A stretch of DNA of 64,000 nucleotides from Monocercomonoides exilis PA203 (lineage: Eukaryota > Protista > Preaxostyla), in assembly GCA_001643675.2 (NCBI GenBank), contig LSRY02000010.1, forward strand, positions 1,798,001-1,862,000, written 5' to 3'. The translations under genes and the position numbers were made by a program. The notes beneath the pieces are model-generated. The model had not been told where the DNA came from, did no database searches, and was given only the letters and a program-made list of their open reading frames with translations. This document shows positions 8,141-48,867 of this stretch, one piece after another; position 1 is the stretch's first letter; every line of letters begins with the position of its first letter.

Positions 8141-8142
<2 letters not shown>

Positions 8143-29262: not shown

Positions 29263-29598
29263 ATTTTTATTGATTAATGTATTTTTGTTCAATTATTTCA
29301 TAAAAATATACCAAAACAAGAATTTTTGCTTGAAAAATATCTATTTAATACTCAAATTAATTCTCTATATTAGAAGTTGAAATTTTCCTTTTAAAAAAAT
29401 CATGATTTGTATGATGCTATTCGTAAAAAAATACACAAAAGATTTTTGTTCTTTTTTCGTAATTGTTACAATATCTTTGACCTTTATAAACAGTGTTGAT
29501 AAAAATGTTTCCTATCAAGTATTTCGAATTAATAATACTTTGTCACAATGCAAGATATTACACTCGTTGAAGGTTAAAAAAAAAAATTTTCTTTTTTT

Positions 29599-29601
<3 letters not shown>

Positions 29602-29645
<44 letters not shown>

Positions 29646-32160: not shown

Positions 32161-32242
<82 letters not shown>
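31344..32242 (+). repeat. Inverted repeat pair 2, right arm (819-bp core 31344-32162 plus poly(A) and (GA)n)
   Basis: Reverse complement of 29646-30464, followed by about 55 A and a GA microsatellite. Confidence 0.93.

Positions 32243-32244
<2 letters not shown>

Positions 32245-32916: not shown

Positions 32917-32918
<2 letters not shown>

Positions 32919-32961
<43 letters not shown>
32919..32961. repeat. Poly(T) tract
   Basis: Direct reading of the sequence. Confidence 0.9.
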
Positions 32962-32963
<2 letters not shown>

Positions 32964-33289
32964 TTTATTTTAAATATCATTTCTTCTTTCATAATATAAT
33001 TAAAAAATTTTGAATGTCAATTTTTTTCAAAATATTCATTGATCCGTAAATTATATAAATCGATCAGACAACCTTTTGATTCCGATCTTGGAGCAAGATT
33101 TTAAAAAGAAGAAATGGTATTTGATTATGAAATCTACAAAGTCTAAACTCAATTTATATTAATATTTGGAATATCTTATTCTTTGATTTTTTGAATATTG
33201 AAATGTAGATTTCGCTTGTTCAAAAATTTTTAAGTGTGCAAAATATTATCTTTGATTGGACAATTTTAAGTTCGTTTTGAATTGAAGAA

Positions 33290-34635
33290 ATGCTTTCTGA
33301 ATTGAATCATTCAACATATGATGTTCAAAAACAGAAAATAGAAGAAATGAATAAAACCATACAAAAAATTTATGAAGACGAATTGGATTTAATTATAACA
33401 GGAAAATTATACGATGATGTCAACAAAATGATTGAAGAAGGGAAAATTTCAACAGAAAATGCATGCCTTCTTTTGAAGAAAGTCGGATATTGCAAAGTTT
33501 TGAGAAGCATAACAAATCAATGTTTTGATTATACTGCCTTAAGACAAAAATTCGAAAAGATGATTGTTGATGAAAACGAGAAAAAAGAAGGAAAAAACGA
33601 AAAGCTTTTATCTGATCTTTGCGAATGCTATTTGTCTAATTGCAGCGTATTTTTTTTGGAAGATGTTCCAAAGGAGCTTGTTTCAATCTGCTTGCACTTT
33701 CTTTTGAAAGTTTCTGGAAACAAAGAGAAAAACGAGAAAGCACAAAAAGAAACTGAAATGTCTTTATTGGCTTTGACAAACATTGGTCTGCATAAAGTGT
33801 GAAAATTGACAATTTATCGTTGACAGTTAATGATCTGTAATAATACTAGGTTGTGAAAACAGAACTGTATTTGAACGAAATCAAAGAGATAATCCAATAT
33901 CACCAGAAATATCACAATTTGACACAACTTGCATATCAATCGGCTTGGAGATTTTTGATTAACAGATTATTCAATGAAGGAGAATTAAGATATGCGATTA
34001 CGAGCGAATTGCAATTTATGAATGAGGCAGTTCAAGAATTGAAAGAGATAGAAAAATGTGTTGAACTGGAAGAAAAAGCAAAGAAAAAAGGAGATAAGGA
34101 AGGAGAAACGAAGGAAAAAGAAACAAAAGAAGATCTGACATTGAAGAGATGTCTCAAAACATTAAATTTATATTTCCAATTTTGCAAATCTGGAGGAAAA
34201 CATTCTGCCGAACTGATTGAATTAGTCATTCGACAGATCAAAGCATCACAGAAAAATCGTAGAGCGCAATTATTAATAGAAAGCTTGAATATTTTTTCAG
34301 AAATGATTTCAAAGGAGACAAATGATGTTTGTAATTTGCTGAATGGAGGAGCAACAGTTTTTGTTTTGGAGGAACTGTTTCGATGTTCATTGAAAAATGA
34401 AATAATAGATTACTGCTTGATTTTCTTTATGAACCTTCAAAGAAGACTTAACGGAAAGATACAAGATGAGAAAAATGAGTTGAAATTAAAAACTGCAAAA
34501 ATAGAAATTTTAAGAGAATATGAAGAAGAAGGATATGAAGATGCAATTATCTCCTCTCTTGGAATGATACATAGTTTCACTTATAGTGGGTTTTTTGTTC
34601 ACTTCAACCTCTCTGACTATTTTATAATTTTATAA
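33290..34635 (+). CDS. Hypothetical helical Glu/Lys/Leu-rich protein, two exons; probably a member of a lineage-specific expanded family
   Basis: ORFs 33290-33802 and 33853-34635 join in frame through a GT-AG intron at 33798-33850 (…GLHK|VVKTELYLNEIKEIIQYHQ…). Motifs EIIQYHQ.YHNLTQLAYQSAW.FL and EEEGYEDAI resemble an oxymonad repeat-family protein (recalled, unverified). Confidence 0.75.
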
Positions 34636-34748
34636 AACCGATAAAGAAAAAGTTATTATCCATAAAATGCATTTCAAGGAAAATTATTATTATTTAAATG
34701 CGATGAAAATTGAAATCAAAAATATTTTTTTTTAACCATAATAATTCA

Positions 34749-35351
34749 ATGACAGAAAAGAAAAGAACATCTAAATGCGGATTACAAGGTTTCCATATCA
34801 ATTTTAATTGATTATTTTTTGACTCATTGTAATATTTATTTTTTTAATAATATTTTTTTGCAACAAATGTTATTAAAGCTTGGATTGATGAATATAAAAA
34901 AAGCTCTGTAACTCCAGAAGAATTCGAGATCAAATTACTTCAGGAACTTAAAACAGTAACGAGTGAAGAAAAGAAGAAGATTCGTGATTTAAGAGATCCA
35001 TCATTAGATTCCGACGGATTTAGAACAGCAAGATCAAAACGAAGAATTGTTTGGATCTTTTGCATTTATTTTGTGTTATTTACGAAACTATATTTGTTAA
35101 ATATTTAGAGCATCTCTTCTAGAAATTCTATGCATATCAAAATCAAGCAACCAAAAATTGTTACAGATTTTTATAAATTCCAGAAAACCGAAGCCAAGAA
35201 GAACAGTATGATCACAACAAAGACAAATTGCATTATTTCTCTAACTTTTTTCAATTTATTTATAGAATTGGAAGAAATACGAAAGCAATTTGAAGAAGAT
35301 AAAAAGCGTGTTTCTCAAATGCGTGAAGCAAGAGTATTCCATCCATTGTAA
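34749..35351 (+). CDS. RRP7: Ribosomal RNA-processing protein 7 (RRP7), C-terminal domain only, 130 aa, four exons
   Basis: Exons 34749-34788, 34879-35048, 35109-35205 and 35266-35351 give ...GLQAWIDEYK...DSDGFRTAR...DFYKFQKTEAKKNKLEEIRKQFEEDKKRVSQMREARVFHPL. This matches the RRP7 consensus DEDGF/W...DFYRFQ.RE.K...LR.KFEEDK.....MK..RKF.PY. Confidence 0.85.
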
Positions 35352-35512
35352 AATCTTCCTTTTCCTGTTTCATTTCAAAAAAAAATATCATTTCAAAAAA
35401 GTTTAAAATAATCAAAAAATTGTAAATTTAAATTCTTAACAATTACTGGAATTAAAGGGCAATTACTTTTTTTTCTTTTTCTTTTTTGAAAAAGATGAAA
35501 AAAAGAAAATTT

Positions 35513-36928
35513 CTAAGCAAGAACAACATTATCCTTTTTTTCTGGGTCAATGATGCGTTTTGATTGAATTCTGCCAGAAGTCAGCTGCCCATTGCTTGGA
35601 GGAGCAGAGAATTCGTCAAAGACAATGTCGGATTTGAATTTGCGCTGAACATTTGGATCTCGACGTTTACGCTCTGTCGGAAGGCGCCTGTCATCCAGCG
35701 AAGAGCCATCGATCCTTGACCACACGCGAGGATCCACATCGAAGCGCTTGCCCATCTTCCCCGAATAGCGAGATGTGTGAAATGAAGAGAAAAGCGGAGC
35801 TTCATCATCCACTTTTAGCTGAGACTTTTCGGTTGAGTTCAGATTAAAAGAGGGAGATGTTGTCTGCTTAGACAGAGTTGTATGCAACGTGGAACGAGTT
35901 GTCCGCACAGGCGAAAAACTGGAAAGTGAAGATATGGTTCTTCTTGTTGTTGGAACGACGGATGGAAGCGTTTCCATTAAAGAAGAATGTGTCCGAGTTG
36001 TGTATGGCGAGCTAAGAGGAGGCTGAGAGGATGCAAGTGACAGAGGAGGGAGATGGTGCCGTGCTGCAGAACTGTGCGAAGATGTAGTAGAAAAAGAGCG
36101 ATTTGTGACATGAGGAGGTGAAAGAGTCTGTTCAGGTGAGTTTTTGAGGAGTGATTTCGAGGGTGAAGTGTGGAGAAAGTGAGTTGGAGTTGTAGATCGA
36201 ATTGACCTCTGAGTCGCTTGGGAGACAGTATATGAAGGATCAGCCGAACCATAAGAATGCTCATAACCCCCTTTTGATAGCGAAGATATAGATTTTTCAA
36301 CTTCTTGGGCAGCCGAGGATCCTTCAAGTGGATCATCTTTCATCAAAGGAGGCTTGTAACGGATAATTTCAGAATGGCTTTCAAAAGGATCGTAATCTCT
36401 CTCATCCACACAATCAAGAAATATTCCTAATCACAAAAAATTTTTTAAAAGTTTCGATATTTCAATTATAAATAATATTATTTTCTAACTTCTTGTATTT
36501 CCAACTCTGATAAACTGATCATATGCCTCTCTCTTCTTCTTCATTGCTTCATTTGCTCTAAACGAATCAACTGATTGCTGTACTTGATCTTTTATCGGAG
36601 AGTACACTTTATCACTCCATTTTTTGAAAATTTTATGAGCCTTTCCAGAAGAGAGAGTTTCAGTTTCTGCAATCGTATGCGTAATTTTACTCACAAAATG
36701 TTCATTTTCTTCTGACAGCTGCGTTAATCTATTAAGAAATTTTGCTTGCTTTTCTTCGAATTGCTCTTGTTTCCGTTTCTTTTGAAAAAGTTATTTATAG
36801 AAATTAACCAAAAATGAAAACGATTTAACCTTGTACTGCTCAACAGATGATGTAAATTGAGCAGAAAAATTTAATTGCTGATCATAATATTGCTCCATTA
36901 CACTTTCACGCAAGTTCTTTCTTTGCAT
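35513..36928 (-). CDS. FAM228-like protein (ciliated-eukaryote family), three exons
   Basis: Exons 36928-36830, 36778-36490 and 36426-35513 give ...KIFKKWSDKVYSPIKDQV...KKREAYDQFIRVGNTRRIFLDCVDERDYDPF, resembling the FAM228 motif (W...V..P...KR......FL....N....F......EYDPF), then a Ser/Pro-rich tail. Confidence 0.6.
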
Positions 36929-37471
36929 TTTTAGACTCTTTTTATCATAATCATTCTTTATATATTATGAGAAAGCCAAATCTTTTGAAATATTTACAAA
37001 CATTGTTGTCATCTATTTCCATGGATTTAATTTCTTCCGATAAAGTTTCTCTTGCCGGAGAAACATAACTCATCTATCCCAAGTGAAAAATGAAATCCAT
37101 AATGGGTATAAAAGATTCAACCAAATATCGAGTCAAAATATGTTGAACAAAAATAAAAAACTAGTTTGTAGCATGAAAAATAATGCAATTTTATAAATTT
37201 AATGATATTAAATAAATAAAGATGTTCGAAATAATAAACAATTTTAAGAATAAAAATCAGAAAATTTTAAACAATTTCGTTAAAATTAAAATTTGAGTTT
37301 TGTCAATTGCTCTGTGATTTAATTTGAATATTGAAAGTGTTTTTTCCATTTTTGAATTTCAATACTTTGGAAATAGTTATTAAAAGGTTATGATCTTTTG
37401 AGCATTATTTCTTTTGGATTGTTAACCATTTTTTGTCCGTTTCGGAGGATAATTATTGAAAAACAATTTTG

Positions 37472-40400
37472 ATGGAAGAATACAATGGAAAGTCTTCTGA
37501 GTCTCTCAGCGGACCTCAAGATCCAATAGCAATTGTTGGTCTTGGGGCCCGTTTGCCAGGTGGAGCGAATTCTCCTGAGCAATTTTGGAAATTGTTATTA
37601 GAAGGTTATGACGCAATAACTGATGTGCCAAAAGAACGTTGGGATGGTAATTACTTCCACGATCCAGAGAATCTTGGACTTGTTGGAAAATCTATTCAAA
37701 ATAAAGGTGGTTTTTTGAAAGGCTACAATATTGATGAAGTTGATTTGAAATTCTTCTATCTTTCACCAAGAGAAGCCAAAAGTCTTGATCCTAACCAACG
37801 ACTTCTTCTTGAAGTTACTTATGAAACATTCGAAAATGCAGGTTTGACACTCGAACAGGTGAGTGGAAGTCGAACTGGAGTTTTCGTTGGGATCTCTGCA
37901 ACAGATTATTCTCATTTGCAATTTCCAGATATAAATACAATTGATGTTCACACACAAACTGGTGTTTCAACTTCGATTGTTGCCAATCGTGTTTCTTATT
38001 TCTATAATCTTATTGGTCCTTCATTTATTGTTGATACTGCTTGTTCTTCAACTCTTGTTGCATTAAATTGTGCTTGCCAGTCTATGAGAACACACGAATG
38101 CGATGCAGCATTATGCGGAGCTGTAAATTTGATGATGTTTCCAGAAATTACAGTCGGTTTTTCAAAACTTGGAGTGCTTTCGCCTGACGGACATTGCAAG
38201 GCTTTTGATGCAAAAGCAAATGGATATGTGAGATCGGAAGGATGCGGAGCAGTTCTTCTGAAGCGTTTATCCGATGCTGAAAGAGATGGAAATCGTATCT
38301 ATGCAGTTATAAGAGGAACTCATGTTGGCTCTGATGGACATTATCAGCAACAAATGACTTCTCCATCTGAGCAGCAACAAGCTGTTGTTATTCGAGAAGT
38401 ACTTAAGAAGTCAGATATTTCTTCAGTCGATGTTGGGTACGTAGAGTCTCATGGAACAGGAACTTTTGTCGGAGATCCAATTGAATGCCGTTCTGTAAGT
38501 TCCGTTCTTAACATTGGAAGGGAAGGAAAAGAGCCCATCCTTATTGGCTCAGCAAAATCAAATGTGGGACATCTAGAGCCAGCAGCTGGTATTGTATCGC
38601 TTGTCAAAATTGCCATGGTTATGAAACATGGAATTATTCCTCCTACAATCAGCATGAAAAAGCCAAATCCAAATATCGATATGCAGAAACTCAACGTGAA
38701 GATAGTGACTAATGCAATGAAATTCCCAGCACCCCCACGCTGCGAAGTTCCACGCACTGCTTTAATTTCTGCATTTGGTTTTGGAGGTACAAATGGAGGA
38801 TGCATTGTGCAAGAATACCGAGGAGGCAAAGGATTGAAGGATGTTAAGAAAGGGTTGAAGGAAATCGAAAGAGAGGAGCTGTTTTTGCTCTCCGCAAGAT
38901 CCGTTGAAGCACTTAAAGGACAAGCAAAACGTCTTGCAGAATATTTAAGCTCTAAGACAGCTTCACCAATTCAGCACGTGGCATACACACTTGGCTGCCA
39001 TAGAACGCAGCACAAACAATGCAGACTTGCGTTTATTGCCAACTCCAAAGAAAGTGCAATTGCCGAGCTGAATGCGTTTATCGAAGACAAGAACGACACA
39101 GGAGCAGTGCAGACTCGCTTCACATCTTTTGCACCATCTGAGAAAAAAAGGAAGTTGTGCCTTGTCTACTGCGGACAGGGCTCGCAGTGGTATGGCATGG
39201 GACGTGTGCTGTACAGAGAAAATGTGGTGTTCAGAGAGTGGATGGACAGAATCGACAACTGTCTGAAGGAAGCAGGTGCGGAATATTCAATTGTGGAGGA
39301 AATTACAACCGGAACTGAAGAGACCTCGCATATACACGAAGTGGAATATCTGCAGCCAATCTTTTTCGCCATCCAGGTGAGTTTGACAAAAGTGATGGAA
39401 GCTGCTGGTCTGAAGCCTGACGCCATTGTGGGACATTCGCTGGGAGAGATCGCTGCTGCACACGTGTCTGGAGCGCTGTCGATTGAAGATGCCACTCGTG
39501 TTGTGTGGGAGAGAGCGAAAGGACAGAAAGTTGCACACGGAATGGGATACATGGCGGCAGTCACAGCTGAAGACGGAAACGATCTGAAGAGATTGATCGA
39601 AGGAAAAGGAGTTGATATTGCGGGCCACAATGCACCAAAGAGATGGAACATTTCTGGTGAGACAGCTGGCTTGGACGAAGTGGAGAAGCTGGCAAATGAA
39701 AAGAGAGGTTCAACTGTGCGTGTGAGACGTCTTCTGGTCGATGAGCCAATGCATTCACAGTTTGTTGATCTGTCTCATGATCAAATTATCGAAGGATTGG
39801 AGGGCATTTCTCCTGCACGTCCAACAACTACGCTGATTTCGACATATACACCGTCAGTGAAGGAGGTGAAGATGGACGGGTATTATTGGTGGGCGTCTCT
39901 CCGTAATCCAGTACTGTTTATGGATGCCATTCAGGAGATGATCAGAAGAACATCGACTGATTCTCCACACGACGCAGAGGAGAATGCAGAGGGAGAACAA
40001 GAGAATAAGGGAATTGAATGGGTGTTCCTGGAATGTGGGCCACACAACGTGCTCAGAACTTTCTTGAGCGAAATTATGGCTGTTGAAAAGAAACCGTTCG
40101 TTTATGTTCCCACATTGTTGAGAAAAGCAGAGAATGAGCGTTTGCTGATGCTGCGAACATTGGCCAATATGTTCTCATTGGGATACAATCTTGATCTGAA
40201 GAAATCTGTGTTTGTGCCATACAACACATACGACGAAAGACAAGCCCGCGTTTTGTTTGAAGAGTCATCTCTGTCTGCAAAGGAAGATGTCCAGGAGTAC
40301 TATTTCGTACCAGACCTTCCATATTATTCGTGGGCTCGCACAAAGTGCTGGAACGAATCACCTGTTCAGCACGAGCATCGCTTGGGACCAGTCGACGGAC

Positions 40401-43400
40401 ATCCCATTGCGAGAATTCGGCAGGACACACTCAACCCTTGCTGGCAGAGCGATATCTCCACATCGCACATCCCGTGGGTGCTGGATCATTGCTTGCAAGG
40501 AAACATTGTTGTGCCTGGTGTGACATTCGTGGAGTGCATATTGACATGCGGACGAAGAGTGTTTGGCGACAGGCCTTTCTGGCTGCGTGATGTGCAATTT
40601 TTGAATGCGTTCTATATGAACAAAGGAGAAACATTCAGAGTGACCATTTCATTGGATCCAATCAACAAGCCGGGCTCCCGTTCCTCAACTGTTGATGCAT
40701 ACAACGTCACCTTATCATCTCGTCTACTTCCCAGTGGCGAATACACACTTCACTGCGCTTTGGTGATGGAAGCCGAAGAACAACTGGCAGAGAGGGAGAA
40801 AAAGCAGCTTGAAGATGTTGTTGATGTTCCTGTTGGATTCACCCCATCTCATCCAGCGAATGCATTTGACGATGTTGATCTTGATGAATACAGAAAACTG
40901 TGCCCGATTGAAATTCCAATTGATCAGTTCTTCTCTCAACTGTGGGTTGATGGGCTGGAGCTGAGCCGACAGCTGCGTCTGACCAGACGTATCTGGTTCA
41001 ACGACAGAGACAACCCGGTGATGTCTATTGCTTACATCGAAGTCAATCCAGAGACGACTGAAGAGGAGCTTGGGAAGTGGGGATTCATGTACCCACCTCT
41101 GCTTGACTCCTGCCTGCAGTCTGGTCTGTCTGCCCGTGCAAAGAGAGGAGCCTTCTTCCCAGTCTCAGCACGCCGCGCACGCTTTGCCCGCTCTTTCCCG
41201 AAGAACTGCCGCCACTGCTGGTCTTTGTCCCGCAAGGATCCAGTCACAGGAAACCTGTCTATGACCTGCTGCGACGACGAAGGACACATCTACGGGTCAC
41301 TTCAGGATGTGGTAATCAGATACCTGGAATCTGGAAAGAGAGGCAGCAAGCTGGGCATGATTGGAGGTCCTGAAACTCCAATGTTTGAACACAAGTGGGA
41401 GCAGATTGCTATTCTGCCTTCATATGAAAGAGAATCGTGCTCGAAATCAGCTGCATTTCCTTTGATTCCATTCGACGAGTCGGATGATAGATGCTGCACT
41501 GACTCAAAGATAGTTAAGTTCTCAGATAAAGAATTTACAGAACACTTCAATTGTCTGATGAACAGCATTGGAGCGGAGTTCCAAGCACAGGAAATTGCAG
41601 AGAACGTCATTCCACTGAACAACCTATTGACTGATGCTATTATTCTCGAAGTCTTCCGATCAAAACTGAATCTGTGGAAAGAAGAAGCCGATTTGATTAA
41701 GCAGAAGAAACTGAATGTTGCCGACATCAAACCAGTTCCTGTGAAGCAGCTTGCTGAATCCGCTTCGATTCTTCCTTTCTATCACAGACTTTTCTTGCTG
41801 CTCTGCCGCTACATGTCAGATTCTGGTTATTTTACACTCAACTTAACAGCTGAAGCGCAGAAGAAAGACAAGAGCGAGCCCATTTTCTTCATTGAGAATT
41901 ATGTTGTTGCTCCGCTTGCGCCATTCTTCCACGATGAGACACAACCATTGCCTCACAACGAAGATTGCGATGCGTTGGCTTCTGAGATTCTGACCAAATA
42001 CCCTCAAATGCGCCCTTCGACGATGCTTATGATGGACGTTGGCCGGAGAATGAAGGATGTGATTGTTGATGGAGAAAAAGCGATTTCGATGATCTTCAAA
42101 GACAAAGGACTTGCAGATTCTGTGTACAGAGATGATGGCGAAGTGCGTACTCTCAACTATGTTGTGCAAGGTGGAATGAAAGGGTTGACTGAACACATTC
42201 AGCGCTTTGTTCTGCCAAAGACTCCCGAGAAACTTGACGAGAATCTCATGAATCTTCTGAAAGGGAAACACGACAAACCGTTGACCATTCTTGAGGTTGG
42301 TGCAGGAACAGGAGGAACTACAGATTATTTGCTTGAATTTTTGGATCCTTTGACGACAACATACACATACACTGATATTTCTGCCTCCTTCTTTGGAACA
42401 GCAAAGGAGCGCTTCTCTCGTTATTCCTCGTTTATGAACTTCAAAATCTTGAACATTGAGAATTCGCCAATGGATCAAGGCTTTGAGCCATATTCACAGG
42501 ATATCATCATCGCAGCCAATGTTGTCCATGCCACTTCTGACTTGTTTACCACACTGACACACATCATGCAGCTTCTCAAGCCAGGCGGGCACTTGGTTCT
42601 TCTCGAAGCATTGAATGGATTGAGATGGCTCGACTTGGTGTTTGGACTGACTGATGGATGGTGGGCACTCAAAGATACGAACTTTAGACAGCATCCATTG
42701 CTGACACCAGACATGTGGAGAGACATTCTGAAGAGAGTTGGTTTTGAGACATGCCAGGTTGTTAATGAATGGACAGCTGATTCGAAGCTTGAAGTTGAGA
42801 AGAAATTGCATTCACGTCTGGGAATGATGGTTGCACGCACTAAGTGCAGTCTGACTGAAGAAAAAGAGAAAGTCGAAATTTTGTTGAATGAACAAAAACA
42901 AGGATGGATGAAAAAGGCGTTCGAACGAGAAGATCAAGCTCCAACAACTACATGCGTTGTCTTTGCAGAAGAAAGAAACGTTCTCTCTGGTAGAATTGTG
43001 TCTTCACTGCTTCGTGATGGTCATTTCGTCATTGCAGCATCTCACAAGCCACTCCCAACAACACACAACAATGAGGACGAGTCATTCCTTCGCACTCTCT
43101 GCGATTTGAATACAACATACAGAGAAACAGATCCAATTCGCCCGAAGGACTCTTTGCTCAATGAAGAAGAAATGAAAGTGTATATCAAACATTTCCATGC
43201 GATTTACGTTCCCGATGCATCAAAGTCTCGAAAGGGATACGACGCAATCTTTGAATACGTCAGTGAACACAAATTGGCATCGATTGTCTCACTCGTTCAT
43301 TTGTGGTCACTTGATCTGCCGTGCGTTGCTAAGACCGAAGAGGAAGTTAAACTTGGATTCGAAATGAACATCTACTCTCCGCTGTACCTTGCACATGCAC

Positions 43401-46400
43401 TGATGGATGCCTCAAAGACTGCATCTGTTTCTTCTCACATAACCACATGGGGTGTGACAGAAGGCGTATGGAGTGTTTCTGGCCAGACAAGAGGAATAGT
43501 GAAGGGAGAAGTTGGGTTGGGTCAGTCAACCATTTGGGGACTTAACAGATCCATCATCAACGAAATTGGAACTGTTCATCCTCGGTCGCTGGATATTGGC
43601 CGCTGCCCCGGACTTACTGAAGTTCAAGGCGTTGTTGGAGTCATCTGCTCAACTGCACTTGATGCAAAGGAAAAATCAGAAGTTGAAGGAAGTTCATCAT
43701 CAATCACTGCAGATACCTCTGCTGTGATTCCACTCAATGAAACTGAAATTGCAATCAGAGGAAACAAATGCTTTGGCCAAAGACTGGTCGAGGTTATGGA
43801 CACATCAGAGCTTGGCGTGACATTCAAATCACTTCAAACAAATTCTGATCCATTCCATTCAGCTGCCAACAGCTTCACACTGACATCACCCGGCAAAGGC
43901 TTGCTTTGGCTTGAAGAGCGAAAGCGAAAGGAGGCATTAGCAGAACACGAAGTAGAGATTGATGTTGCTGGATGTGGTGTGACAGCACACGACGTGTCCG
44001 TATGGCAGCGCTCTGGCAACAGCAGCAAAGGGCAAAGCTACGACCTGGGCAATGAATTTGCTGGTGTGGTCCGACGAGTAGGAACAGGTGTGACACGCGT
44101 GAAGGTTGGAGACTTTGTGTTTGGTGTGGGAAAAGAATGCTGCGGATCGTTTGTGACTATTTCTGAAAGCCACGTTGCTGCGTTCCCGAAGGACTGCGAC
44201 CTCAGCTGGGATCAAGCTAGCGGGTTGGGTCTGGAGCTATCAGCTGCAGTGTACTCGCTTGTGAATGTTGGGCGAGTGAAGAAAGGAGATTACGTGCTGA
44301 TCACTGGAGCCACTGGAGCAACAGGGCTGATTGCCATTGAGATCTGCAGACAGGTCGGAGCAATTCCGATTGTCACATCAAGAAGCGAATACAAGCGCCG
44401 CTGGTTGCAATACATGGGACTGAAGCATGTGCTGGACACTGATGCTATTACCATTGTTGAGAAATGCAGGGAAATCACAAACGGAAAAGGAGTGAAAATT
44501 GCAGTCAATGCTGTTCCTGTTGATGCAATCTTGAAGGCTGCTTTGACTTCTCTGAGGAAAGGTGGAGCTCTTGTTGACTTGTGCGCATCCAGCACGAGCA
44601 ACCTCCATCTCGACTCAACTCTCCTTGCTGGACGCAACATCACATACAGAGCTGTTGACATTCTGCAGATGTTCACTGACCCAGATTCAGAAGAAGAAGT
44701 CATCGAATTGATGGATGAGTGCACCAAAGTTCTGTCCAATGAACAATTTGCACCACCACCAGTCACCACATTTGCACTTTCACAAGCAAAAGAAGCATAT
44801 GAAGCAATGAAATCTGAGAATCATTCAGGAAAGATCGTACTGTTCCCTATTTCGTCTATTCCTCCTCTCTTTTTGATTGATGTTGAACAACTTGCTTCTC
44901 AATCATCTGCTTCGTCTTCATCAAGCGTTCCATCAACCTTACCGATTAAAGCTCACAAGTTGAAATATGCTTCGCCTTTCATTTATTCTCCTGTTGCTGT
45001 GCCTTTCGCTCAAAAAGTGCTTGGAAAAGAAGCACAAGGAAGCTACATTGATCCAACCAAGACTTACTTGGTGACAGGTGGAACAGCTGGATTCTCCCTT
45101 GAATTGGCTGTTGGATTGCTGGAAAGAGGAGCAAAGCATCTTGCTGTTTCCTCTCGTTCTGGCGCAGGAAATGAAGAGAGACAGAGGAAATTCCAGATGC
45201 TGAGAGAGAAATACGATGCAGAGATTAAAGTGTTCAGTTGCGATGCATCTTCTTCATCAGAGACAAGAGCCATGCTGGCTGAGATTAGAAAGACAATGCC
45301 TCCACTCACTGGTGTCATCCACGGTGCAATGCTTTTGCATGATGGGTATCTGATGAACTTGGATGACAAGGCATTCTGGGAAGTGCTTGGTCCCAAATCA
45401 TTTGGTGCTTGGCTGATTCACGACGATACTGTGAAGAACAACGATCCAATCACAATGTTTGTGCTTCTCTCATCGTTGAATGTTGTTGTCGGAACACACG
45501 GACAGGCAAACTATGGTTCAGCTAACATGTTCCTTGACTCACTTTGCTTGCACAGAAGAAGCTGTGGACTGCCATGCATCTCTCTGCAGTGGGGTGTGCT
45601 GGGCGATGTTGGATACGTCCACCGTAACACAAGCACCATCGGACAGAACATGGGACAGTTTGGATTCCGCGCATTCTCTGCCAACTGGGCTAAGAGAGTG
45701 ATGCACACATGCCTCGAGGCACAGGCTGACTTAGAGCAGATGCGAAGCAGTGAGTGGAATCACGAATCTGTTGAAAGAGCATCCCATTCACTCACCTCCA
45801 CAATGGCTGAAAGACTGTCAAATACCTACAAAGCTCTTCCTGTCGGTCTTCTCCCAGGCTCTCTTCGTCCTGAAAACGATGTTGTGATCAAGTCACACTT
45901 CTTTGACGGCTCAGAAAACTTCCGAAATGTTCTTCTTGCAAGAGAAGTGTACAAACATCCACTCTTTGTGCCTGTGACTGTTGGTGTCTTCAATGTGAGC
46001 TGGAAGCCATTGTTTGCATTTATGCAAACACTTGGAGACACAGCTCGTATGAGATACATGAAAGAAGCCTCTGAATTGGAAGCAGCTGCCAGCGAATCAG
46101 CTGATTCCACGAAAGATTCAGCCTCAGCTTCTTCTTCCTCTGCCTCGTCTTCTTCGTCCAAAGGCACTGGATCATATTCTTCAGTTTCTGATGCACTTCG
46201 TTCGATGGTCACAGAAGAGGAGTCAATTGCCTTTTTGGCTCGCTCCATTGCAAATGAAGCAGCACGTGTTTTGGGTCTGTCGAGCGGCGATGCCATTGTG
46301 GTGGATGTTCCACTGTCACAGTATGGTTTGGATTCACTCACAGCTGTTGAAATGAAGAACTGGACAGAGAAGCAAGTGAAGGTCGATATTCCTGTTGTCG

Positions 46401-48379
46401 ACTTCGTGAGAGGACCATCATCAGATCAGCTGGCAAAGAGCATGCTGGTGAAGTTCTATGAGACGTACGGAAAGCCAAAGCAGAAGCAGGCTGAAGAAGG
46501 AAAAGCTACAGAAGCCGACGGAAAGAAAGCCGAAGCAGCAAAGAACGCATCTTCAGCTACCCAAGCCGAGAAGGAGAAATCTTCTGCCTCTGAGAAAGCT
46601 GATGAAGAAGCACAACAAGCTGAAGTGCAAGTGGAGAAGCGCAAGCAACCACTTACAGCATATGTGTTTACGGGACAGTCTGGTCTGAAGGCGGGTGTTG
46701 GAATGGATATATATGATATGTATCCAGAAGCCAAGCTTGTGTGGGACAAATGTGATGAACACTTTGTGGAAGAGCTTGGAATATCCATTCTGAAGATTGT
46801 GAGAGAGAATCCGAAAGAATATGTGATCGATTTCACTGATGGTGAGAAAGGCAAGAAGCTGAGAGAGAAATACATGAATCTGAAAGTGACCAATGATGAG
46901 GAAGTGATGAAGGAGGTGAAGAAGATTGATCCTACAATCAATGCCCATGTCTTCCCAACAGTAAATGAAAGAACAGAATCTTACACTTTCCATTCACCGA
47001 ACGGACTGTTGAACATGACCCACTTTGCACAGCCAATCATCATCATCTACGAGTATGCTGCACTTGCATGCCTCGAAGCAATCAGAAAGAAGTCTTCACA
47101 GAATCAGCACGGCAATGTCACTGAAGGCATTCACCACATGTTCTGCGGACATTCACTGGGTGAATACTGTGCACTGACAGCGATGGGAGACATTGCATCA
47201 GCTGAAGAGATGGCAATGGTGTGCTTTATGAGAGGAATGGTGATGCAGAGCTGCGTGCCTCGTGATCCAGTCACCCACATGACTGACTATGCAATGGCTG
47301 CTGTTTCACCAATGCGTGTGGCTCCGTGGTTCAAGATTGAACATCTGAGAAGGGTGATGGAATCAACCGTCAATGCATGTGGAGGCAGACTGTTGCAGAT
47401 TGTGAACTACAATGTGTACAATGACCAGTATGTTGTGTCTGGTGAAAGATATGCGATTTTGCAGTTGTCTTTGGCACTGACACACGTTGAGGAGATGAGT
47501 AGAGAGAAACTGGCGCAGAAGACCAGCTCAGACGACGAGAAAGACAACAAAGCAATGATTGAAGAGATTATGAGCACAGTTGACCGATTCTGCTATGTCT
47601 CTATTGGAACACATCCTCATTCATCAACACCACTTGAACTTCAGCGCACATCCAGTGTTATGCAGCTGAAAGGAATTGACATGCCATTCCATTCGCGTCT
47701 TCTGAGAAAAGTTGTCCCACTCTTCCGCTCCTTCCTAGACTCTCGCCTTCCATCTGTCAAAGACTACAGCTACGCAGACAGGCTGGTTGGCCGCTTTATC
47801 ACCAACACTTACAGCCAGGAGACCTTCTCGCTCTCTCTGAGCTATGTGCAGAAGATGGTGAAAGTGACAGATTCTCCTTATCTCAAAGAGGCCCTGGGAG
47901 AATTGCTGGATCCATCAGCAAACGAGATGATGCTGCTGCACGAAATGAAGCAAGCACAATCATCATCTGCATCTGCATCCTCATCTTCAGAAGCTCGTGT
48001 CTTCCCTCGCTGGCTGTCGATGAGTGCCAACGAAAAAGCGCGCCTTCTTCTGCGCGAGTCTCTTTCCTACCAGTTTGCTTCCCCAGTGCAGTGGATCGAT
48101 GCACAGAACACGCTGATGCTCAATGGTGTTGTGCGTGTTGTGGAGATTGGGCCTGCTAAGACGCTGTCCACAATGTTCTCGAAGTCGACGATGCGCCTGG
48201 GCGAGCAAGGCGAGCTGGGCAAAGAGATCACGAAGCGCCTGAATAAACTGGTAGCCCAACAAAAAGAGGCACCGAAAGATCAAAAAGAACGTGCTATTCC
48301 CAAGACAAATGGAGTTGAAATCATTTCATTTGCTACAGATAGAGAATTGCTGGAGGCACTTGCAATGGAAGAGATTTAA
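37472..48379 (+). CDS. Type I PKS/FAS megasynthase KS-AT-DH-cMT-ER-KR-ACP-MPT (~3635 aa, intronless)
   Basis: KS DTACSS/HGTGT/KSNVGHLE (~37517-38820); AT GQGSQW/GHSLG (~39150-40190); DH HCLQGNIVVP/LDSCLQ (~40400-41330); cMT ILEVGAGTGG, YTYTDIS, NVVHAT, LLKPGG (~42020-42720); ER (~43870-44850); KR TGGTAG, K-S-Y..N (~45060-45620); ACP GLDSL (46325-46339); C-terminal fungal-FAS MPT FTGQ, GHSLGEY, PFHS, YQFASPVQW, EIGP (46646-48376). The first ATG is at 37472; the ORF track starts at TTG 37469. Confidence 0.95.
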   Translation: MEEYNGKSSESLSGPQDPIAIVGLGARLPGGANSPEQFWKLLLEGYDAITDVPKERWDGNYFHDPENLGLVGKSIQNKGGFLKGYNIDEVDLKFFYLSPREAKSLDPNQRLLLEVTYETFENAGLTLEQVSGSRTGVFVGISATDYSHLQFPDINTIDVHTQTGVSTSIVANRVSYFYNLIGPSFIVDTACSSTLVALNCACQSMRTHECDAALCGAVNLMMFPEITVGFSKLGVLSPDGHCKAFDAKANGYVRSEGCGAVLLKRLSDAERDGNRIYAVIRGTHVGSDGHYQQQMTSPSEQQQAVVIREVLKKSDISSVDVGYVESHGTGTFVGDPIECRSVSSVLNIGREGKEPILIGSAKSNVGHLEPAAGIVSLVKIAMVMKHGIIPPTISMKKPNPNIDMQKLNVKIVTNAMKFPAPPRCEVPRTALISAFGFGGTNGGCIVQEYRGGKGLKDVKKGLKEIEREELFLLSARSVEALKGQAKRLAEYLSSKTASPIQHVAYTLGCHRTQHKQCRLAFIANSKESAIAELNAFIEDKNDTGAVQTRFTSFAPSEKKRKLCLVYCGQGSQWYGMGRVLYRENVVFREWMDRIDNCLKEAGAEYSIVEEITTGTEETSHIHEVEYLQPIFFAIQVSLTKVMEAAGLKPDAIVGHSLGEIAAAHVSGALSIEDATRVVWERAKGQKVAHGMGYMAAVTAEDGNDLKRLIEGKGVDIAGHNAPKRWNISGETAGLDEVEKLANEKRGSTVRVRRLLVDEPMHSQFVDLSHDQIIEGLEGISPARPTTTLISTYTPSVKEVKMDGYYWWASLRNPVLFMDAIQEMIRRTSTDSPHDAEENAEGEQENKGIEWVFLECGPHNVLRTFLSEIMAVEKKPFVYVPTLLRKAENERLLMLRTLANMFSLGYNLDLKKSVFVPYNTYDERQARVLFEESSLSAKEDVQEYYFVPDLPYYSWARTKCWNESPVQHEHRLGPVDGHPIARIRQDTLNPCWQSDISTSHIPWVLDHCLQGNIVVPGVTFVECILTCGRRVFGDRPFWLRDVQFLNAFYMNKGETFRVTISLDPINKPGSRSSTVDAYNVTLSSRLLPSGEYTLHCALVMEAEEQLAEREKKQLEDVVDVPVGFTPSHPANAFDDVDLDEYRKLCPIEIPIDQFFSQLWVDGLELSRQLRLTRRIWFNDRDNPVMSIAYIEVNPETTEEELGKWGFMYPPLLDSCLQSGLSARAKRGAFFPVSARRARFARSFPKNCRHCWSLSRKDPVTGNLSMTCCDDEGHIYGSLQDVVIRYLESGKRGSKLGMIGGPETPMFEHKWEQIAILPSYERESCSKSAAFPLIPFDESDDRCCTDSKIVKFSDKEFTEHFNCLMNSIGAEFQAQEIAENVIPLNNLLTDAIILEVFRSKLNLWKEEADLIKQKKLNVADIKPVPVKQLAESASILPFYHRLFLLLCRYMSDSGYFTLNLTAEAQKKDKSEPIFFIENYVVAPLAPFFHDETQPLPHNEDCDALASEILTKYPQMRPSTMLMMDVGRRMKDVIVDGEKAISMIFKDKGLADSVYRDDGEVRTLNYVVQGGMKGLTEHIQRFVLPKTPEKLDENLMNLLKGKHDKPLTILEVGAGTGGTTDYLLEFLDPLTTTYTYTDISASFFGTAKERFSRYSSFMNFKILNIENSPMDQGFEPYSQDIIIAANVVHATSDLFTTLTHIMQLLKPGGHLVLLEALNGLRWLDLVFGLTDGWWALKDTNFRQHPLLTPDMWRDILKRVGFETCQVVNEWTADSKLEVEKKLHSRLGMMVARTKCSLTEEKEKVEILLNEQKQGWMKKAFEREDQAPTTTCVVFAEERNVLSGRIVSSLLRDGHFVIAASHKPLPTTHNNEDESFLRTLCDLNTTYRETDPIRPKDSLLNEEEMKVYIKHFHAIYVPDASKSRKGYDAIFEYVSEHKLASIVSLVHLWSLDLPCVAKTEEEVKLGFEMNIYSPLYLAHALMDASKTASVSSHITTWGVTEGVWSVSGQTRGIVKGEVGLGQSTIWGLNRSIINEIGTVHPRSLDIGRCPGLTEVQGVVGVICSTALDAKEKSEVEGSSSSITADTSAVIPLNETEIAIRGNKCFGQRLVEVMDTSELGVTFKSLQTNSDPFHSAANSFTLTSPGKGLLWLEERKRKEALAEHEVEIDVAGCGVTAHDVSVWQRSGNSSKGQSYDLGNEFAGVVRRVGTGVTRVKVGDFVFGVGKECCGSFVTISESHVAAFPKDCDLSWDQASGLGLELSAAVYSLVNVGRVKKGDYVLITGATGATGLIAIEICRQVGAIPIVTSRSEYKRRWLQYMGLKHVLDTDAITIVEKCREITNGKGVKIAVNAVPVDAILKAALTSLRKGGALVDLCASSTSNLHLDSTLLAGRNITYRAVDILQMFTDPDSEEEVIELMDECTKVLSNEQFAPPPVTTFALSQAKEAYEAMKSENHSGKIVLFPISSIPPLFLIDVEQLASQSSASSSSSVPSTLPIKAHKLKYASPFIYSPVAVPFAQKVLGKEAQGSYIDPTKTYLVTGGTAGFSLELAVGLLERGAKHLAVSSRSGAGNEERQRKFQMLREKYDAEIKVFSCDASSSSETRAMLAEIRKTMPPLTGVIHGAMLLHDGYLMNLDDKAFWEVLGPKSFGAWLIHDDTVKNNDPITMFVLLSSLNVVVGTHGQANYGSANMFLDSLCLHRRSCGLPCISLQWGVLGDVGYVHRNTSTIGQNMGQFGFRAFSANWAKRVMHTCLEAQADLEQMRSSEWNHESVERASHSLTSTMAERLSNTYKALPVGLLPGSLRPENDVVIKSHFFDGSENFRNVLLAREVYKHPLFVPVTVGVFNVSWKPLFAFMQTLGDTARMRYMKEASELEAAASESADSTKDSASASSSSASSSSSKGTGSYSSVSDALRSMVTEEESIAFLARSIANEAARVLGLSSGDAIVVDVPLSQYGLDSLTAVEMKNWTEKQVKVDIPVVDFVRGPSSDQLAKSMLVKFYETYGKPKQKQAEEGKATEADGKKAEAAKNASSATQAEKEKSSASEKADEEAQQAEVQVEKRKQPLTAYVFTGQSGLKAGVGMDIYDMYPEAKLVWDKCDEHFVEELGISILKIVRENPKEYVIDFTDGEKGKKLREKYMNLKVTNDEEVMKEVKKIDPTINAHVFPTVNERTESYTFHSPNGLLNMTHFAQPIIIIYEYAALACLEAIRKKSSQNQHGNVTEGIHHMFCGHSLGEYCALTAMGDIASAEEMAMVCFMRGMVMQSCVPRDPVTHMTDYAMAAVSPMRVAPWFKIEHLRRVMESTVNACGGRLLQIVNYNVYNDQYVVSGERYAILQLSLALTHVEEMSREKLAQKTSSDDEKDNKAMIEEIMSTVDRFCYVSIGTHPHSSTPLELQRTSSVMQLKGIDMPFHSRLLRKVVPLFRSFLDSRLPSVKDYSYADRLVGRFITNTYSQETFSLSLSYVQKMVKVTDSPYLKEALGELLDPSANEMMLLHEMKQAQSSSASASSSSEARVFPRWLSMSANEKARLLLRESLSYQFASPVQWIDAQNTLMLNGVVRVVEIGPAKTLSTMFSKSTMRLGEQGELGKEITKRLNKLVAQQKEAPKDQKERAIPKTNGVEIISFATDRELLEALAMEEI

Positions 48380-48867
48380 TATTTATAAAAAAAATAAAAT
48401 AAAATCATAATTATATTTGTGAAACAAAGAATTTACTTTTCATTCCCTACAACTTTTATTCCTTTTCTTGTTATGTAGCCTTTTGTTATTAGTTGTCATC
48501 TTTTTGTATTTCCTTCAATTTGTAGATAAAATATTAGTTTATTCAAGTTACGCATTCTCCTGAAACATTACATTTTTCCAACCACTATTTAATTTCGAGA
48601 GCTTTTATGATATTCTTAATTTGATCCATTTTGTTGGATCGAAATTCTATTCATTAACATTCGTTCTCTTGAATAATCATTTTGAGGAGTTATTCCCAAT
48701 CTAGATTTTTTCATCTCTTTTCTTTTTTTAATCGCCTTTTCGAAATTAATACTGTTTGAAGTTCATACAATATTTTTTTGTCTTTTTGAACATTTTGACT
48801 ATGAAGTGGTAAAGAATGGAAAAAAATCTTTCAATTCAATTTGGATCAAATAAACCTTATCAAATTT

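What the first reader, a model, noticed from the sequence alone, without database searches (positions are those of the whole stretch)
37472..48379. Chimeric megasynthase: highly reducing PKS chassis terminated by a fungal-FAS malonyl/palmitoyl transferase instead of a thioesterase
Seen: one ORF reads KS-AT-DH-cMT-ER-KR-ACP, the order shared by fungal HR-PKS and animal FAS. After a charged Ala/Glu/Lys linker it carries a second, unrelated transferase (46646-48376) with motifs that match the yeast FAS MPT in order: AYVFTGQ..G.GMD.Y, GISILKIVRENP, GEKGKKLREKY, SYTFHSPNGLL..T.FAQP, GHSLGEY.AL, F.RGM.MQ..VPRD, IVNYNV.N.QYV..G, PFHS. Established: MPT belongs to the barrel-type fungal/CMN-bacterial FAS lineage, where it loads malonyl and off-loads the finished chain onto CoA. 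HR-PKS and animal FAS instead end at ACP, TE, R, a carnitine-acyltransferase domain or an NRPS module. Inference: domain shuffling between the two independent type I FAS/PKS architectures produced a synthase that releases possibly methyl-branched acyl-CoA directly into lipid synthesis, or uses the second transferase to load a different starter. I do not recall this architecture being described. It is especially striking if the host is an anaerobic metamonad, since studied relatives (Giardia, Trichomonas) lack de novo fatty-acid synthesis.
Basis: partly seen in the sequence, partly recalled or inferred. Interest (0 to 1): 0.93.

Follow-up and report, generated by a model that had tools for sequence, protein, structure and literature searches.

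The report
Polyketide synthase ending in FAS transferase
An expressed gene of the mitochondrion-less protist Monocercomonoides exilis joins a polyketide-synthase-type assembly line to the malonyl/palmitoyl transferase of yeast-type fatty acid synthase, a domain combination found here only in this protist group and possibly its overlooked route to fatty acyl-CoA.

Summary
Window 37472-48376 (+) is one uninterrupted 3635-aa ORF. Its Pfam order is KS-AT-DH-cMT-ER-KR-ACP, followed by a poorly conserved 60-aa linker and a second acyltransferase.

The last domain is a true barrel-FAS malonyl/palmitoyl transferase (MPT):
- It matches fungal FAS beta at E 4e-70, against about 1e-9 for FabD.
- It also holds the piece that ascomycetes carry at the Fas2 N-terminus.
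- The Gln, Ser, Arg and His columns of the MPT motifs are invariant.
- The AlphaFold model (pLDDT 92) matches yeast and mycobacterial MPT.
- A tree puts it in the MPT clade, far from the protein's own AT.

It is not a chimera or contaminant. The genome matches the M. exilis ONT assembly and holds three such paralogs. The same ending occurs in Blattamonas and Paratrimastix, and two metagenome contigs also end ACP-MPT. A Streblomastix fragment matches the MPT. RNA-library unitigs cross the ACP-MPT junction.

The genome has no barrel FAS, no lone FabD and no animal-type FAS. No paper found describes the fusion. The scan noted the same fusion on a paralog (s1-463731).

Function (release as acyl-CoA) is inferred. 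This copy's ER domain has lost conserved motifs, and the chassis resembles bacterial PKS modules most. Verdict: a new variant of a known kind, of high interest.

The parts
37472..48379 (+). Whole coding sequence with stop codon: 3635 aa, no intron, one module
   Evidence: It equals protein P0001 of the protein collection.
37520..38656 (+). Ketosynthase (aa 17-395). The Cys191 (DTACSS), HGTGT and NVGH motifs are present.
   Evidence: Pfam PF00109 at E 3.7e-85 and PF02801. Motifs are conserved in 6 family members.
39164..39940 (+). Internal acyltransferase (aa 565-823). It has GHSLGE, a conserved Arg (WERAKGQ) and an unusual PMHS in place of the usual HAFH or YASH.
   Evidence: Pfam PF00698, motifs. 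It groups with PKS ATs, 4.76 substitutions per site away from the MPT clade.
40430..41335 (+). Dehydratase (aa 987-1288) with the HxxxGxxxxP motif and DxxxQ
   Evidence: Pfam PF21089 and PF14765, motifs
42224..42754 (+). C-methyltransferase (aa 1585-1761). SAM motif LEVGAGTGG, plus the His of NVVHAT and the Glu of LLEA.
   Evidence: Pfam PF08242. The best solved relative is the CurJ C-methyltransferase at E 3e-47, with the His and Glu positions aligned. Conserved in the family.
43943..44842 (+). Enoylreductase (aa 2158-2457), divergent in this paralog. The cofactor motif reads LITGATGATG instead of LIHAxxGGxG. The Lys of FVEIGK is replaced (LVDLCA, Ala2372).
   Evidence: Pfam PF00107 and PF08240. 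Identity to paralog P0002 is 49%, against 74-92% for the other domains. Alignment to the mycocerosic acid synthase ER.
45062..45601 (+). Ketoreductase (aa 2531-2710) with GGTAGF and the Tyr of NYGSAN
   Evidence: Pfam PF08659 at E 2.9e-48, motifs
46232..46465 (+). PKS-type acyl carrier domain (aa 2921-2998). The phosphopantetheine site is Ser2955 (GLDSL).
   Evidence: Pfam PF00550 and PF23297, motif
46466..46645 (+). Ala/Glu/Lys-rich linker (aa 2999-3058), poorly conserved and probably a flexible tether
   Evidence: 15-33% identity among family members. The start of the model is low-confidence: pLDDT 49 and 59 for the first two blocks of ten residues.
46646..47896 (+). MPT, the part that matches the C-terminus of the fungal FAS beta subunit (aa 3059-3475). 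Gln3069, Ser3228 (GHSLGEY), Arg3254 and His3407 (PFHS).
   Evidence: phmmer against PDB at E 4e-70 to Fas1 1653-2052. These columns are invariant in a 46-sequence alignment. Model and Foldseek.
47897..48028 (+). Ser-rich insert at the point where ascomycete FAS is split into two subunits (aa about 3476-3519)
   Evidence: It lies between the two PDB matches. pLDDT dips in blocks 46-47 of the model.
48029..48196 (+). MPT, the part that matches the N-terminus of the fungal FAS alpha subunit (aa 3520-3575)
   Evidence: phmmer to Fas2 residues 7-61 at E about 1e-6. Also present in unsplit FAS of Mucoromycota, oomycetes and CMN bacteria.
48197..48376 (+). C-terminal tail (aa 3576-3635), conserved only among oxymonads and modelled as packed helices and a strand
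48380..48770 (+). Likely 3' untranslated region. RNA-library unitigs end at 48603-48770 and there is no depth from 48849 on.
   Evidence: The mean 3'UTR in M. exilis is 312 bp (PMC8767320).

Best explanation
The gene encodes a single-module, iterative type I synthase of the PKS/animal-FAS fold (KS-AT-DH-cMT-ER-KR-ACP). A thioesterase would normally follow the ACP. Here a complete malonyl/palmitoyl transferase from the barrel-type (fungal/CMN) FAS lineage sits there instead.

Proposed mechanism (inferred, not shown):
- The chain grows on the PKS-type ACP from malonyl units, probably with SAM-dependent alpha-methylation.
- The tethered MPT then takes the finished acyl chain onto Ser3228 and passes it to CoA, as MPT does in yeast FAS. 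The product leaves as acyl-CoA, ready for ER elongases and glycerolipid acyltransferases.
- The malonyl-binding Arg is kept, so the MPT may also load malonyl. The internal AT would then act as primer or second loader, which is the two-transferase logic of fungal FAS.

The fusion arose before oxymonads and Paratrimastix diverged. It has since been duplicated into three copies in M. exilis. This copy has a degenerate ER, so it may make an unsaturated or otherwise different product than its two paralogs.
For: Architecture and intact catalytic motifs.
MPT identity:
- E 4e-70 to fungal Fas1 MPT, plus a match to the Fas2 head.
- Gln, Ser, Arg and His columns invariant across 46 MPTs from Preaxostyla, eukaryotic FAS and CMN bacteria.
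- Model with pLDDT 92.2 and pTM 0.91.
- Foldseek: yeast MPT domain 9pqz_G TMt 0.87 and M. tuberculosis MPT 9pqy_A TMt 0.83, ahead of FabD.
- Tree: a single Preaxostyla clade (SH-aLRT 99) inside the MPT clade (100), far from the PKS ATs.
No other release domain is present. No Pfam thioesterase or reductase-release domain was reported in the ORF. The two bimodular PKS ORFs of the same genome do carry a TE inside the ORF.
Conservation:
- Three paralogs in the genome, all open frames of 3533-3672 aa.
- The same ACP-then-terminal-MPT ending in two Blattamonas proteins, one Paratrimastix protein and metagenome contigs in which the gene stops inside the contig.
- A Streblomastix strix fragment matches the MPT only, so its upstream architecture is unseen.
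Expression: unitigs from four metatranscriptome runs tile 43600-48770 with no differences. One runs from inside the ACP into the MPT (46351-47305). Coverage stops about 400 nt after the stop codon.
Metabolic context in the genome:
- Acetyl-CoA carboxylase-type carboxyltransferase at three loci.
- An Sfp-type PPTase.
- No barrel FAS and no acyltransferase outside the six megasynthase ORFs.
- The only other KS genes are FAAL-primed PKSs.
- The M. exilis genome paper found ER elongases that use malonyl-CoA, but no short-chain fatty acid synthesis components (PMC6759080).
Against: - No biochemical data exist, and transfer to CoA is argued only by analogy with fungal and CMN FAS.
- Stand-alone thioesterase-like ORFs exist in the genome (C51, C18) and could release the product in trans.
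- The intact SAM motif and His/Glu pair of the cMT point to a methylated product rather than plain palmitate.
- In this copy, and in both Blattamonas copies, the Lys of the ER's FVEIGK motif is replaced. The cofactor motif is also altered. This fits a specialised polyketide better than a housekeeping saturated fatty acid.
- An ACP-MPT docking prediction gave no verdict.
Confidence: 0.55

Rival explanations
1. The C-terminal MPT is only a second loading transferase, for malonyl or a special starter moved from CoA to the ACP. The product is released by a separate enzyme, such as one of the stand-alone thioesterase-like proteins.
For: The malonyl-binding Arg3254 is invariant. The internal AT has an atypical PMHS motif, and Blattamonas has AHSLGE, so loading duties may have shifted. 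Stand-alone TE-like ORFs exist.
Against: The internal AT keeps its Ser, Arg and His in all six proteins, so a second pure loader would be redundant. The domain sits exactly where release domains sit, and no other release domain is fused in any family member. In barrel FAS the same domain performs the release (established knowledge of yeast FAS).
Confidence: 0.25
2. The MPT passes the finished chain to an acceptor other than CoA, for example a lipid or sugar hydroxyl or another carrier protein. The enzyme would then be a specialised-metabolite synthase rather than part of bulk lipid synthesis.
For: The cMT looks active. The ER is degenerate in this copy and in Blattamonas. Three diverging paralogs suggest different products. 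The MPT clade sits on a long stem of 0.76 substitutions per site.
Against: The MPT motif columns shared with CoA-using MPTs are invariant. No partner gene lies nearby; the neighbours are dynein, an Arm-repeat protein, a nucleotidase-like protein and RPN2.
Confidence: 0.12
3. The fusion is an assembly chimera, a contaminant, or a dead relic domain.
For: None found.
Against: - Three paralogs lie on three contigs.
- Independent assemblies of two other genera (Blattamonas, Paratrimastix) and two metagenome contigs show the same junction.
- An RNA unitig crosses the junction.
- The flanks hold ordinary eukaryotic genes.
- The MPT motif residues are invariant.
Confidence: 0.02

Closest known systems
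MPT domain of fungal type I FAS (yeast Fas1 C-terminus plus Fas2 N-terminus) and of CMN-bacterial FAS-I
   Same: Same domain family by sequence (33-36% identity to solved fungal MPTs in Foldseek; 33-39% to FAS MPTs in alignment A1), with the Gln, Ser, Arg and His motif residues. Same fold, and the alpha-subunit-derived segment is included.
   Different: It is not part of a barrel FAS. The genome has no Fas1 helical, MaoC-DH or FAS-ACP parts. It follows a PKS-type ACP through a 60-aa linker, carries a Ser-rich insert and an oxymonad-specific tail, and forms a separate deep clade.
Mycocerosic acid synthase and MAS-like PKS of mycobacteria
   Same: An iterative, fully reducing KS-AT-DH-ER-KR-ACP synthase that makes methyl-branched fatty acyl chains. 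It is the best solved match for the ER (E 6e-32) and a strong match for KS-AT (493 bits). From established knowledge, MAS also lacks a thioesterase and hands its product to a separate acyltransferase.
   Different: From established knowledge, MAS gets its methyl branches from methylmalonyl-CoA. Here there is an embedded SAM-dependent cMT. Here too the transferase is fused and belongs to the FAS MPT family.
Cyanobacterial curacin PKS modules (CurJ, CurL)
   Same: The best solved cMT match is CurJ at E 3e-47, and KS-AT matches CurL at 535 bits. The cMT lies between DH and ER in the query.
   Different: Those are modules of a multi-module assembly line with a downstream hand-over. This is a stand-alone single module in a eukaryote, ending in MPT.
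Fungal highly reducing PKS with a C-terminal carnitine-acyltransferase-like domain, and LovB
   Same: The logic is the same: an acyl-transfer domain after the ACP instead of a hydrolase. LovB likewise has an inactive ER (established knowledge). LovB matches KS-AT at 397 bits and the cMT at E 2e-38.
   Different: The terminal domain has an unrelated fold and origin. The chassis scores lower against LovB than against bacterial PKS modules.
Animal FASN and Dictyostelium Pks16
   Same: Same overall fold and domain order. From established knowledge, Pks16 is a PKS-like protein proposed to serve as the FAS of a protist. Pks16 matches at 441 bits.
   Different: From established knowledge, FASN has an inactive pseudo-methyltransferase and a C-terminal thioesterase that releases free palmitate. 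Here the SAM motif is intact and the end is an MPT. FASN KS-AT scores only about 345 bits.

Membership tests
Barrel-FAS malonyl/palmitoyl transferase (MPT) domain | Sequence far closer to FAS MPT than to FabD or PKS AT | tested here: met
   E 4e-70 to Fas1 MPT against about 1e-9 to FabD. The MPT query does not hit the AT of the modular PKS inspected (P0263) at the thresholds used.
Barrel-FAS malonyl/palmitoyl transferase (MPT) domain | Branches inside the MPT clade in a tree of AT-fold domains | tested here: met
   MPT clade SH-aLRT 100 and Preaxostyla subclade 99. PKS ATs, including the protein's own, are 4.76 substitutions per site away.
Barrel-FAS malonyl/palmitoyl transferase (MPT) domain | GHSLGEY Ser, PFHS His, malonyl-binding Arg and the GQ of the oxyanion hole | tested here: met
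   Q30, H188-S189, R215 and H368 are invariant in 46 sequences and present in all six full-length family members.
Barrel-FAS malonyl/palmitoyl transferase (MPT) domain | Contains the segment that split fungal FAS carries at the alpha-subunit N-terminus | tested here: met
   aa 3520-3573 match Fas2 residues 7-61.
Barrel-FAS malonyl/palmitoyl transferase (MPT) domain | MPT three-dimensional fold | tested here: met
   Model pLDDT 92.2. The best Foldseek hits are fungal FAS MPT at E 3e-27. 9pqz_G gives TMt 0.87 and Mtb 9pqy_A gives 0.83.
Barrel-FAS malonyl/palmitoyl transferase (MPT) domain | Sits in an AT-ER-DH-MPT / ACP-KR-KS-PPT barrel synthase | tested here: not met
   The protein has only PKS-type domains. 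There is no Fas1 helical domain anywhere in the genome.
Barrel-FAS malonyl/palmitoyl transferase (MPT) domain | Dual activity: malonyl-CoA to ACP, and long acyl-ACP to CoA | not testable with these tools
   Needs enzyme assays.
Iterative highly reducing type I PKS / mFAS-fold synthase | Single module in the order KS-AT-DH-(cMT)-ER-KR-ACP | tested here: met
   (one KS in the ORF)
Iterative highly reducing type I PKS / mFAS-fold synthase | Catalytic motifs of KS, AT, DH, cMT, KR and ACP | tested here: met
   The cMT His and Glu align with CurJ.
Iterative highly reducing type I PKS / mFAS-fold synthase | Functional enoylreductase (cofactor motif and the Lys of FVEIGK) | tested here: inconclusive
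   This copy has LITGATGATG and LVDLCA (Ala2372 for Lys). Paralogs P0002 and P0003 and Paratrimastix keep the canonical motifs. Activity cannot be judged from sequence alone.
Iterative highly reducing type I PKS / mFAS-fold synthase | Ends at ACP, TE, reductase, cAT or an NRPS module | tested here: not met
   It ends in an MPT domain.
Animal-type fatty acid synthase (FASN) | Inactive pseudo-methyltransferase and a C-terminal thioesterase | tested here: not met
   The SAM motif and His/Glu are intact. No TE was reported. KS-AT scores lower against FASN than against bacterial PKS.

The most novel reading that the evidence does not exclude
These PKS-MPT enzymes are the missing de novo fatty acid synthases of Preaxostyla. 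They would be a third way to build a eukaryotic type I FAS, joining the animal/PKS-fold chassis to the CoA-offloading transferase of the yeast-type barrel. They would supply (partly methyl-branched) acyl-CoA to ER elongases in a cell without mitochondria or type II FAS. The paralogs would have diverged in reducing power, with this copy ER-deficient.
Probability: 0.35. Interest if true: 0.85.

Novelty: new variant of a known kind. Interest (0 to 1): 0.76.

Why it matters
Type I FAS/PKS enzymes come in two unrelated architectures: the animal/PKS X-shaped dimer and the fungal/CMN barrel. Domain exchange between them has, as far as I could find, not been described.

This fusion shows that a barrel-FAS MPT can be moved onto a PKS-type ACP and then kept for a long time, since before oxymonads and Paratrimastix split. 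That bears on how release chemistry evolves. It also offers a natural template for engineering PKSs that deliver acyl-CoA rather than free acids.

For the biology of M. exilis, the model eukaryote without mitochondria, it gives concrete candidate genes for a pathway the genome paper reported as not identified. Whether these anaerobes make their own, possibly branched, fatty acids becomes directly testable.

Tried and rejected
- Complex prediction of the MPT (aa 3055-3635) with the ACP (aa 2912-3002) scored 0.00 with no verdict. It counts neither for nor against docking.
- The donor of the MPT could not be resolved. In the tree the Preaxostyla clade forms an unresolved polytomy with CMN-bacterial and eukaryotic FAS MPTs. 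An AU test could not reject even a grouping with anaerobic gut fungi (p 0.18). I make no claim about a donor or about lateral transfer.
- The search for homologous proteins on KS-AT was swamped by multi-module actinobacterial PKSs, whose scores add up over modules, so it gave no usable picture of the chassis origin. I used per-domain PDB comparisons instead. Those show similarity, not phylogeny.
- I checked whether the 2390-aa KS-bearing ORF on contig C5 is an animal-type FAS. It is FAAL-ACP-KS-AT.
- I checked whether P0249 (5652 aa, with an MPT in the middle) is another chimera. It is an ordinary fused fungal-type FAS with a long N-terminal extension.
- The supplementary tables of PMC6759080 are not held, so I could not see how the M. 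exilis curators labelled these genes.
- Literature searches for the fusion found nothing. The library lacks most subscription journals, so this is not proof of absence.
Full report
OBSERVATION

Window 37469-48379 (+) is the longest ORF on that strand. From the first ATG at 37472 it encodes 3635 aa without interruption.

Pfam gives KS 17-395, AT 565-823, DH 987-1288, cMT 1585-1761, ER 2158-2457, KR 2531-2710 and ACP 2926-2988, plus a second Acyl_transf_1 stretch. Scanned alone, the C-terminal 637 aa match only Acyl_transf_1, at E 2e-29.

WHAT THE LAST DOMAIN IS

Against all PDB sequences the last 637 aa hit the MPT region of fungal FAS beta subunits. The best hit is Thermomyces Fas1 residues 1653-2052 at E 4e-70, and yeast Fas1 scores 1e-59. 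A separate stretch (aa 3520-3573) hits residues 7-61 of fungal FAS alpha subunits at E about 1e-6. Mycobacterial FAS-I scores about 1e-31 and FabD only about 1e-9.

The domain is therefore the complete, unsplit MPT. A Ser-rich insert sits where ascomycete FAS is cut into two chains. This agrees with scan note s1-464998.

In an alignment of 46 MPTs (Preaxostyla, eukaryotic fungal-type FAS, CMN bacteria) several columns are invariant. They are the Gln of the FTGQ motif, the His-Ser of GHSLGEY, the Arg of the RGxxMQ motif and the His of PFHS. In this protein these are Gln3069, Ser3228, Arg3254 and His3407.

An AlphaFold2 model built on that alignment is confident, with pLDDT 92.2 and pTM 0.91. 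Foldseek ranks fungal FAS beta first, at E 3e-27. The isolated yeast MPT domain 9pqz_G gives TMt 0.87 and the M. tuberculosis MPT 9pqy_A gives TMt 0.83. FabD follows at about 1e-13.

In a maximum-likelihood tree (IQ-TREE quick search, LG+C20) the Preaxostyla terminal domains form one clade (SH-aLRT 99). That clade lies inside the MPT clade (100). The MPT clade is 4.76 substitutions per site away from PKS ATs, including these proteins' own internal ATs.

IS THE FUSION REAL?

The window lies on contig C2 of a genome of 82,301,135 bases in 101 contigs. This matches the published ONT assembly of Monocercomonoides exilis PA203, which has 101 contigs and about 82.3 Mbp (PMC8767320).

The flanking ORFs are ordinary nuclear genes: a dynein heavy chain, Arm-repeat proteins, a nucleotidase-like protein and proteasome RPN2.

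The genome holds three such genes, on C2, C23 and C31. All are open frames of 3533-3672 aa, and their MPTs are 67-70% identical.

Proteins with the same composition and a terminal MPT are on record from:
- M. exilis (P0002 and P0003, probably the two paralogs);
- Blattamonas nauphoetae (P0004, P0005 and the near-identical fragment P0122);
- Paratrimastix pyriformis (P0007);
- two metagenome contigs in which the gene ends inside the contig just after the MPT.

A Streblomastix strix fragment (P0123) matches the MPT only, so its upstream architecture is unseen.

Among the 379 proteins fetched, PKS-type KR/ACP and an MPT occur together only in this set.

Four metatranscriptome runs from one 2024 study hold the stretch. 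Their unitigs tile 43600-48770 with no differences. One unitig (46351-47305) runs from inside the ACP through the linker into the MPT. Coverage ends about 400 nt after the stop codon, as expected for a transcript rather than contaminating DNA.

These are contigs, so they do not prove a single full-length mRNA. Even so, an assembly chimera or a contaminant is excluded for practical purposes.

THE CHASSIS

The KS Cys/His/His, AT Ser/Arg/His, DH HxxxGxxxxP, KR and ACP Ser motifs are conserved in all six full-length family members.

The cMT keeps the SAM-binding motif. It also keeps the His and Glu that align with the CurJ C-methyltransferase, its best solved relative at E 3e-47. That these two residues are the CurJ catalytic pair is from my memory of the CurJ paper.

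By similarity to solved structures, KS-AT is nearest to bacterial cis-AT PKS modules (CurL 535 bits) and to mycocerosic acid synthase (493 bits). Dictyostelium Pks16 (441), LovB (397) and animal FAS (about 345) follow. The ER is nearest to mycocerosic acid synthase.

The sequences, however, look like a bacterial-type PKS module.

This paralog's ER is only 44-49% identical to the ERs of the two other M. exilis copies, while the other domains are 69-92% identical.

Its cofactor motif reads LITGATGATG instead of LIHAxxGGxG. The Lys of the FVEIGK motif is replaced (LVDLCA). Paralogs P0002 and P0003, Paratrimastix and mycocerosic acid synthase all keep that Lys. The Blattamonas copies have also lost it.

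This copy may therefore be ER-deficient, like LovB.

CONTEXT IN THE GENOME

- There is no Fas1 helical domain, so no barrel FAS.
- All twelve Acyl_transf_1 matches lie inside six megasynthase ORFs, so there is no stand-alone FabD.
- The eight KS matches lie in the same six ORFs. Three are the PKS-MPT genes. Two are bimodular PKSs on C28 that carry a thioesterase inside the ORF. One is a FAAL-ACP-KS-AT gene on C5.
- Acetyl-CoA carboxylase-type carboxyltransferase is present at three loci.
- An Sfp/AASDHPPT-type PPTase is present.
- Stand-alone thioesterase-like ORFs also exist.

The M. exilis genome paper reports ER elongases that use malonyl-CoA. [quoted passage not shown]

A 2025 metabolic-modelling study says in passing that M. 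exilis can synthesise medium-chain fatty acids. The passages found give no genes (PMC12308965).

The Preaxostyla comparative-genomics paper does not mention polyketide, acyl, lipid or malonyl (PMC10703272). A 2026 survey notes FAAL-PKS genes in Preaxostyla but not this fusion (PMC12820801).

HOW IT MOST LIKELY WORKS

Shown:
- a single-module synthase with the catalytic motifs of KS, AT, DH, cMT, KR and ACP conserved (the ER is the exception, see above);
- a complete MPT, with its conserved motif residues, tethered by a poorly conserved linker right after the ACP;
- no other release domain;
- long-term conservation of the arrangement;
- transcription.

Inferred: the MPT takes over the thioesterase's role and moves the finished chain from the ACP to CoA, as it does in yeast and CMN FAS. 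Because the Arg is kept, it may also load malonyl. The internal AT would then act as primer or second loader. The product would be an acyl-CoA, probably alpha-methylated. From this copy it may be unsaturated.

I put 0.55 on release to CoA, 0.25 on loading only with release in trans, 0.12 on transfer to another acceptor and 0.02 on an artefact.

COMPARISON AND NOVELTY

The domain is a member of the MPT family by every feature that could be tested. The exception is its context, because it is not in a barrel FAS.

The protein is a member of the iterative type I PKS/mFAS-fold class. The exception is its ending, and in this copy possibly the ER.

The closest analogies are:
- mycocerosic acid synthase, an iterative branched-chain synthase without a TE whose product is handed to a separate acyltransferase;
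- fungal HR-PKSs with a terminal carnitine-acyltransferase-like domain, which use the same logic with an unrelated fold;
- Dictyostelium Pks16, a PKS-like protein proposed to act as a FAS.

The proteins are in public databases under automatic names such as 'putative polyketide synthase PksE'. I found no description of the architecture. The scan itself noted the same fusion on a paralog (s1-463731).

I rate it a new variant of a known kind.

LIMITS

- The origin of the MPT is unresolved. The tree gives a polytomy, and the AU test does not reject a grouping with anaerobic fungi (p 0.18).
- The ACP-MPT docking prediction gave no verdict.
- Chain length, methylation pattern and the released form all need experiments.

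Noticed in passing
window 43943-44842 (aa 2158-2457): The ER domain of this paralog evolves much faster than the rest of the protein. It is 44-49% identical to the two sister paralogs, against 69-92% for the other domains. It has lost the canonical GGxG cofactor motif and the Lys of FVEIGK. Both Blattamonas copies have lost the Lys too, while Paratrimastix and the other two M. exilis copies keep it.
   Followed up: partly
window 37472-48379: The 10.9-kb gene has no intron, in a genome with about 1.95 introns per gene (PMC8767320). Its two paralogs are also single open frames of 3533-3672 aa. This hints at acquisition by transfer or retroposition, but I did not test it.
   Followed up: no
window 11758-26274 (-): A 4838-aa uninterrupted ORF encodes a complete dynein heavy chain (DHC_N1/N2, AAA1-6, stalk, C-terminal domain).
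   Followed up: partly
window 52631-55153 (+): Two consecutive ORFs (526 aa with PC/HEAT repeats, 259 aa with RPN2_C) look like one proteasome RPN2 gene split by a short intron.
   Followed up: no
G000:C5:1340792-1347961 (L007:792-7961, -): A 2390-aa ORF with FAAL (AMP-binding)-ACP-KS-AT. It is one of the FAAL-PKS genes of Preaxostyla mentioned in PMC12820801.
   Followed up: partly
G000:C28, around 714808-727884 and 1019581-1032600: Two ORFs of 5325 and 5237 aa each hold two KS, two AT and a thioesterase. They are bimodular PKSs with a canonical TE ending, in contrast to the MPT ending studied here. The scan's notes s1-466170 and s1-463814 describe FAAL-primed bimodular PKSs on another piece of this genome, which probably correspond to them.
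   Followed up: partly
window-wide composition: Coding stretches have 41-55% G+C (the synthase gene 45-47%), while several largely non-coding stretches drop to 25-33% (e.g. 8001-12000, 26001-36000).
   Followed up: no
PDB 7pua_Fg / 7pub_Fg: An 'acyl transferase-like protein' of the Trypanosoma brucei mitoribosome assembly intermediates is the next-best match after FAS MPTs. It scores E 1.7e-18 by sequence, ahead of FabD. This hints at a wider eukaryotic spread of MPT-like domains.
   Followed up: no
protein P0249 (5652 aa, source not looked up): A fused fungal-type FAS with an extra N-terminal extension of about 1900 aa that has no Pfam match. It forms a long branch in the MPT tree.
   Followed up: partly
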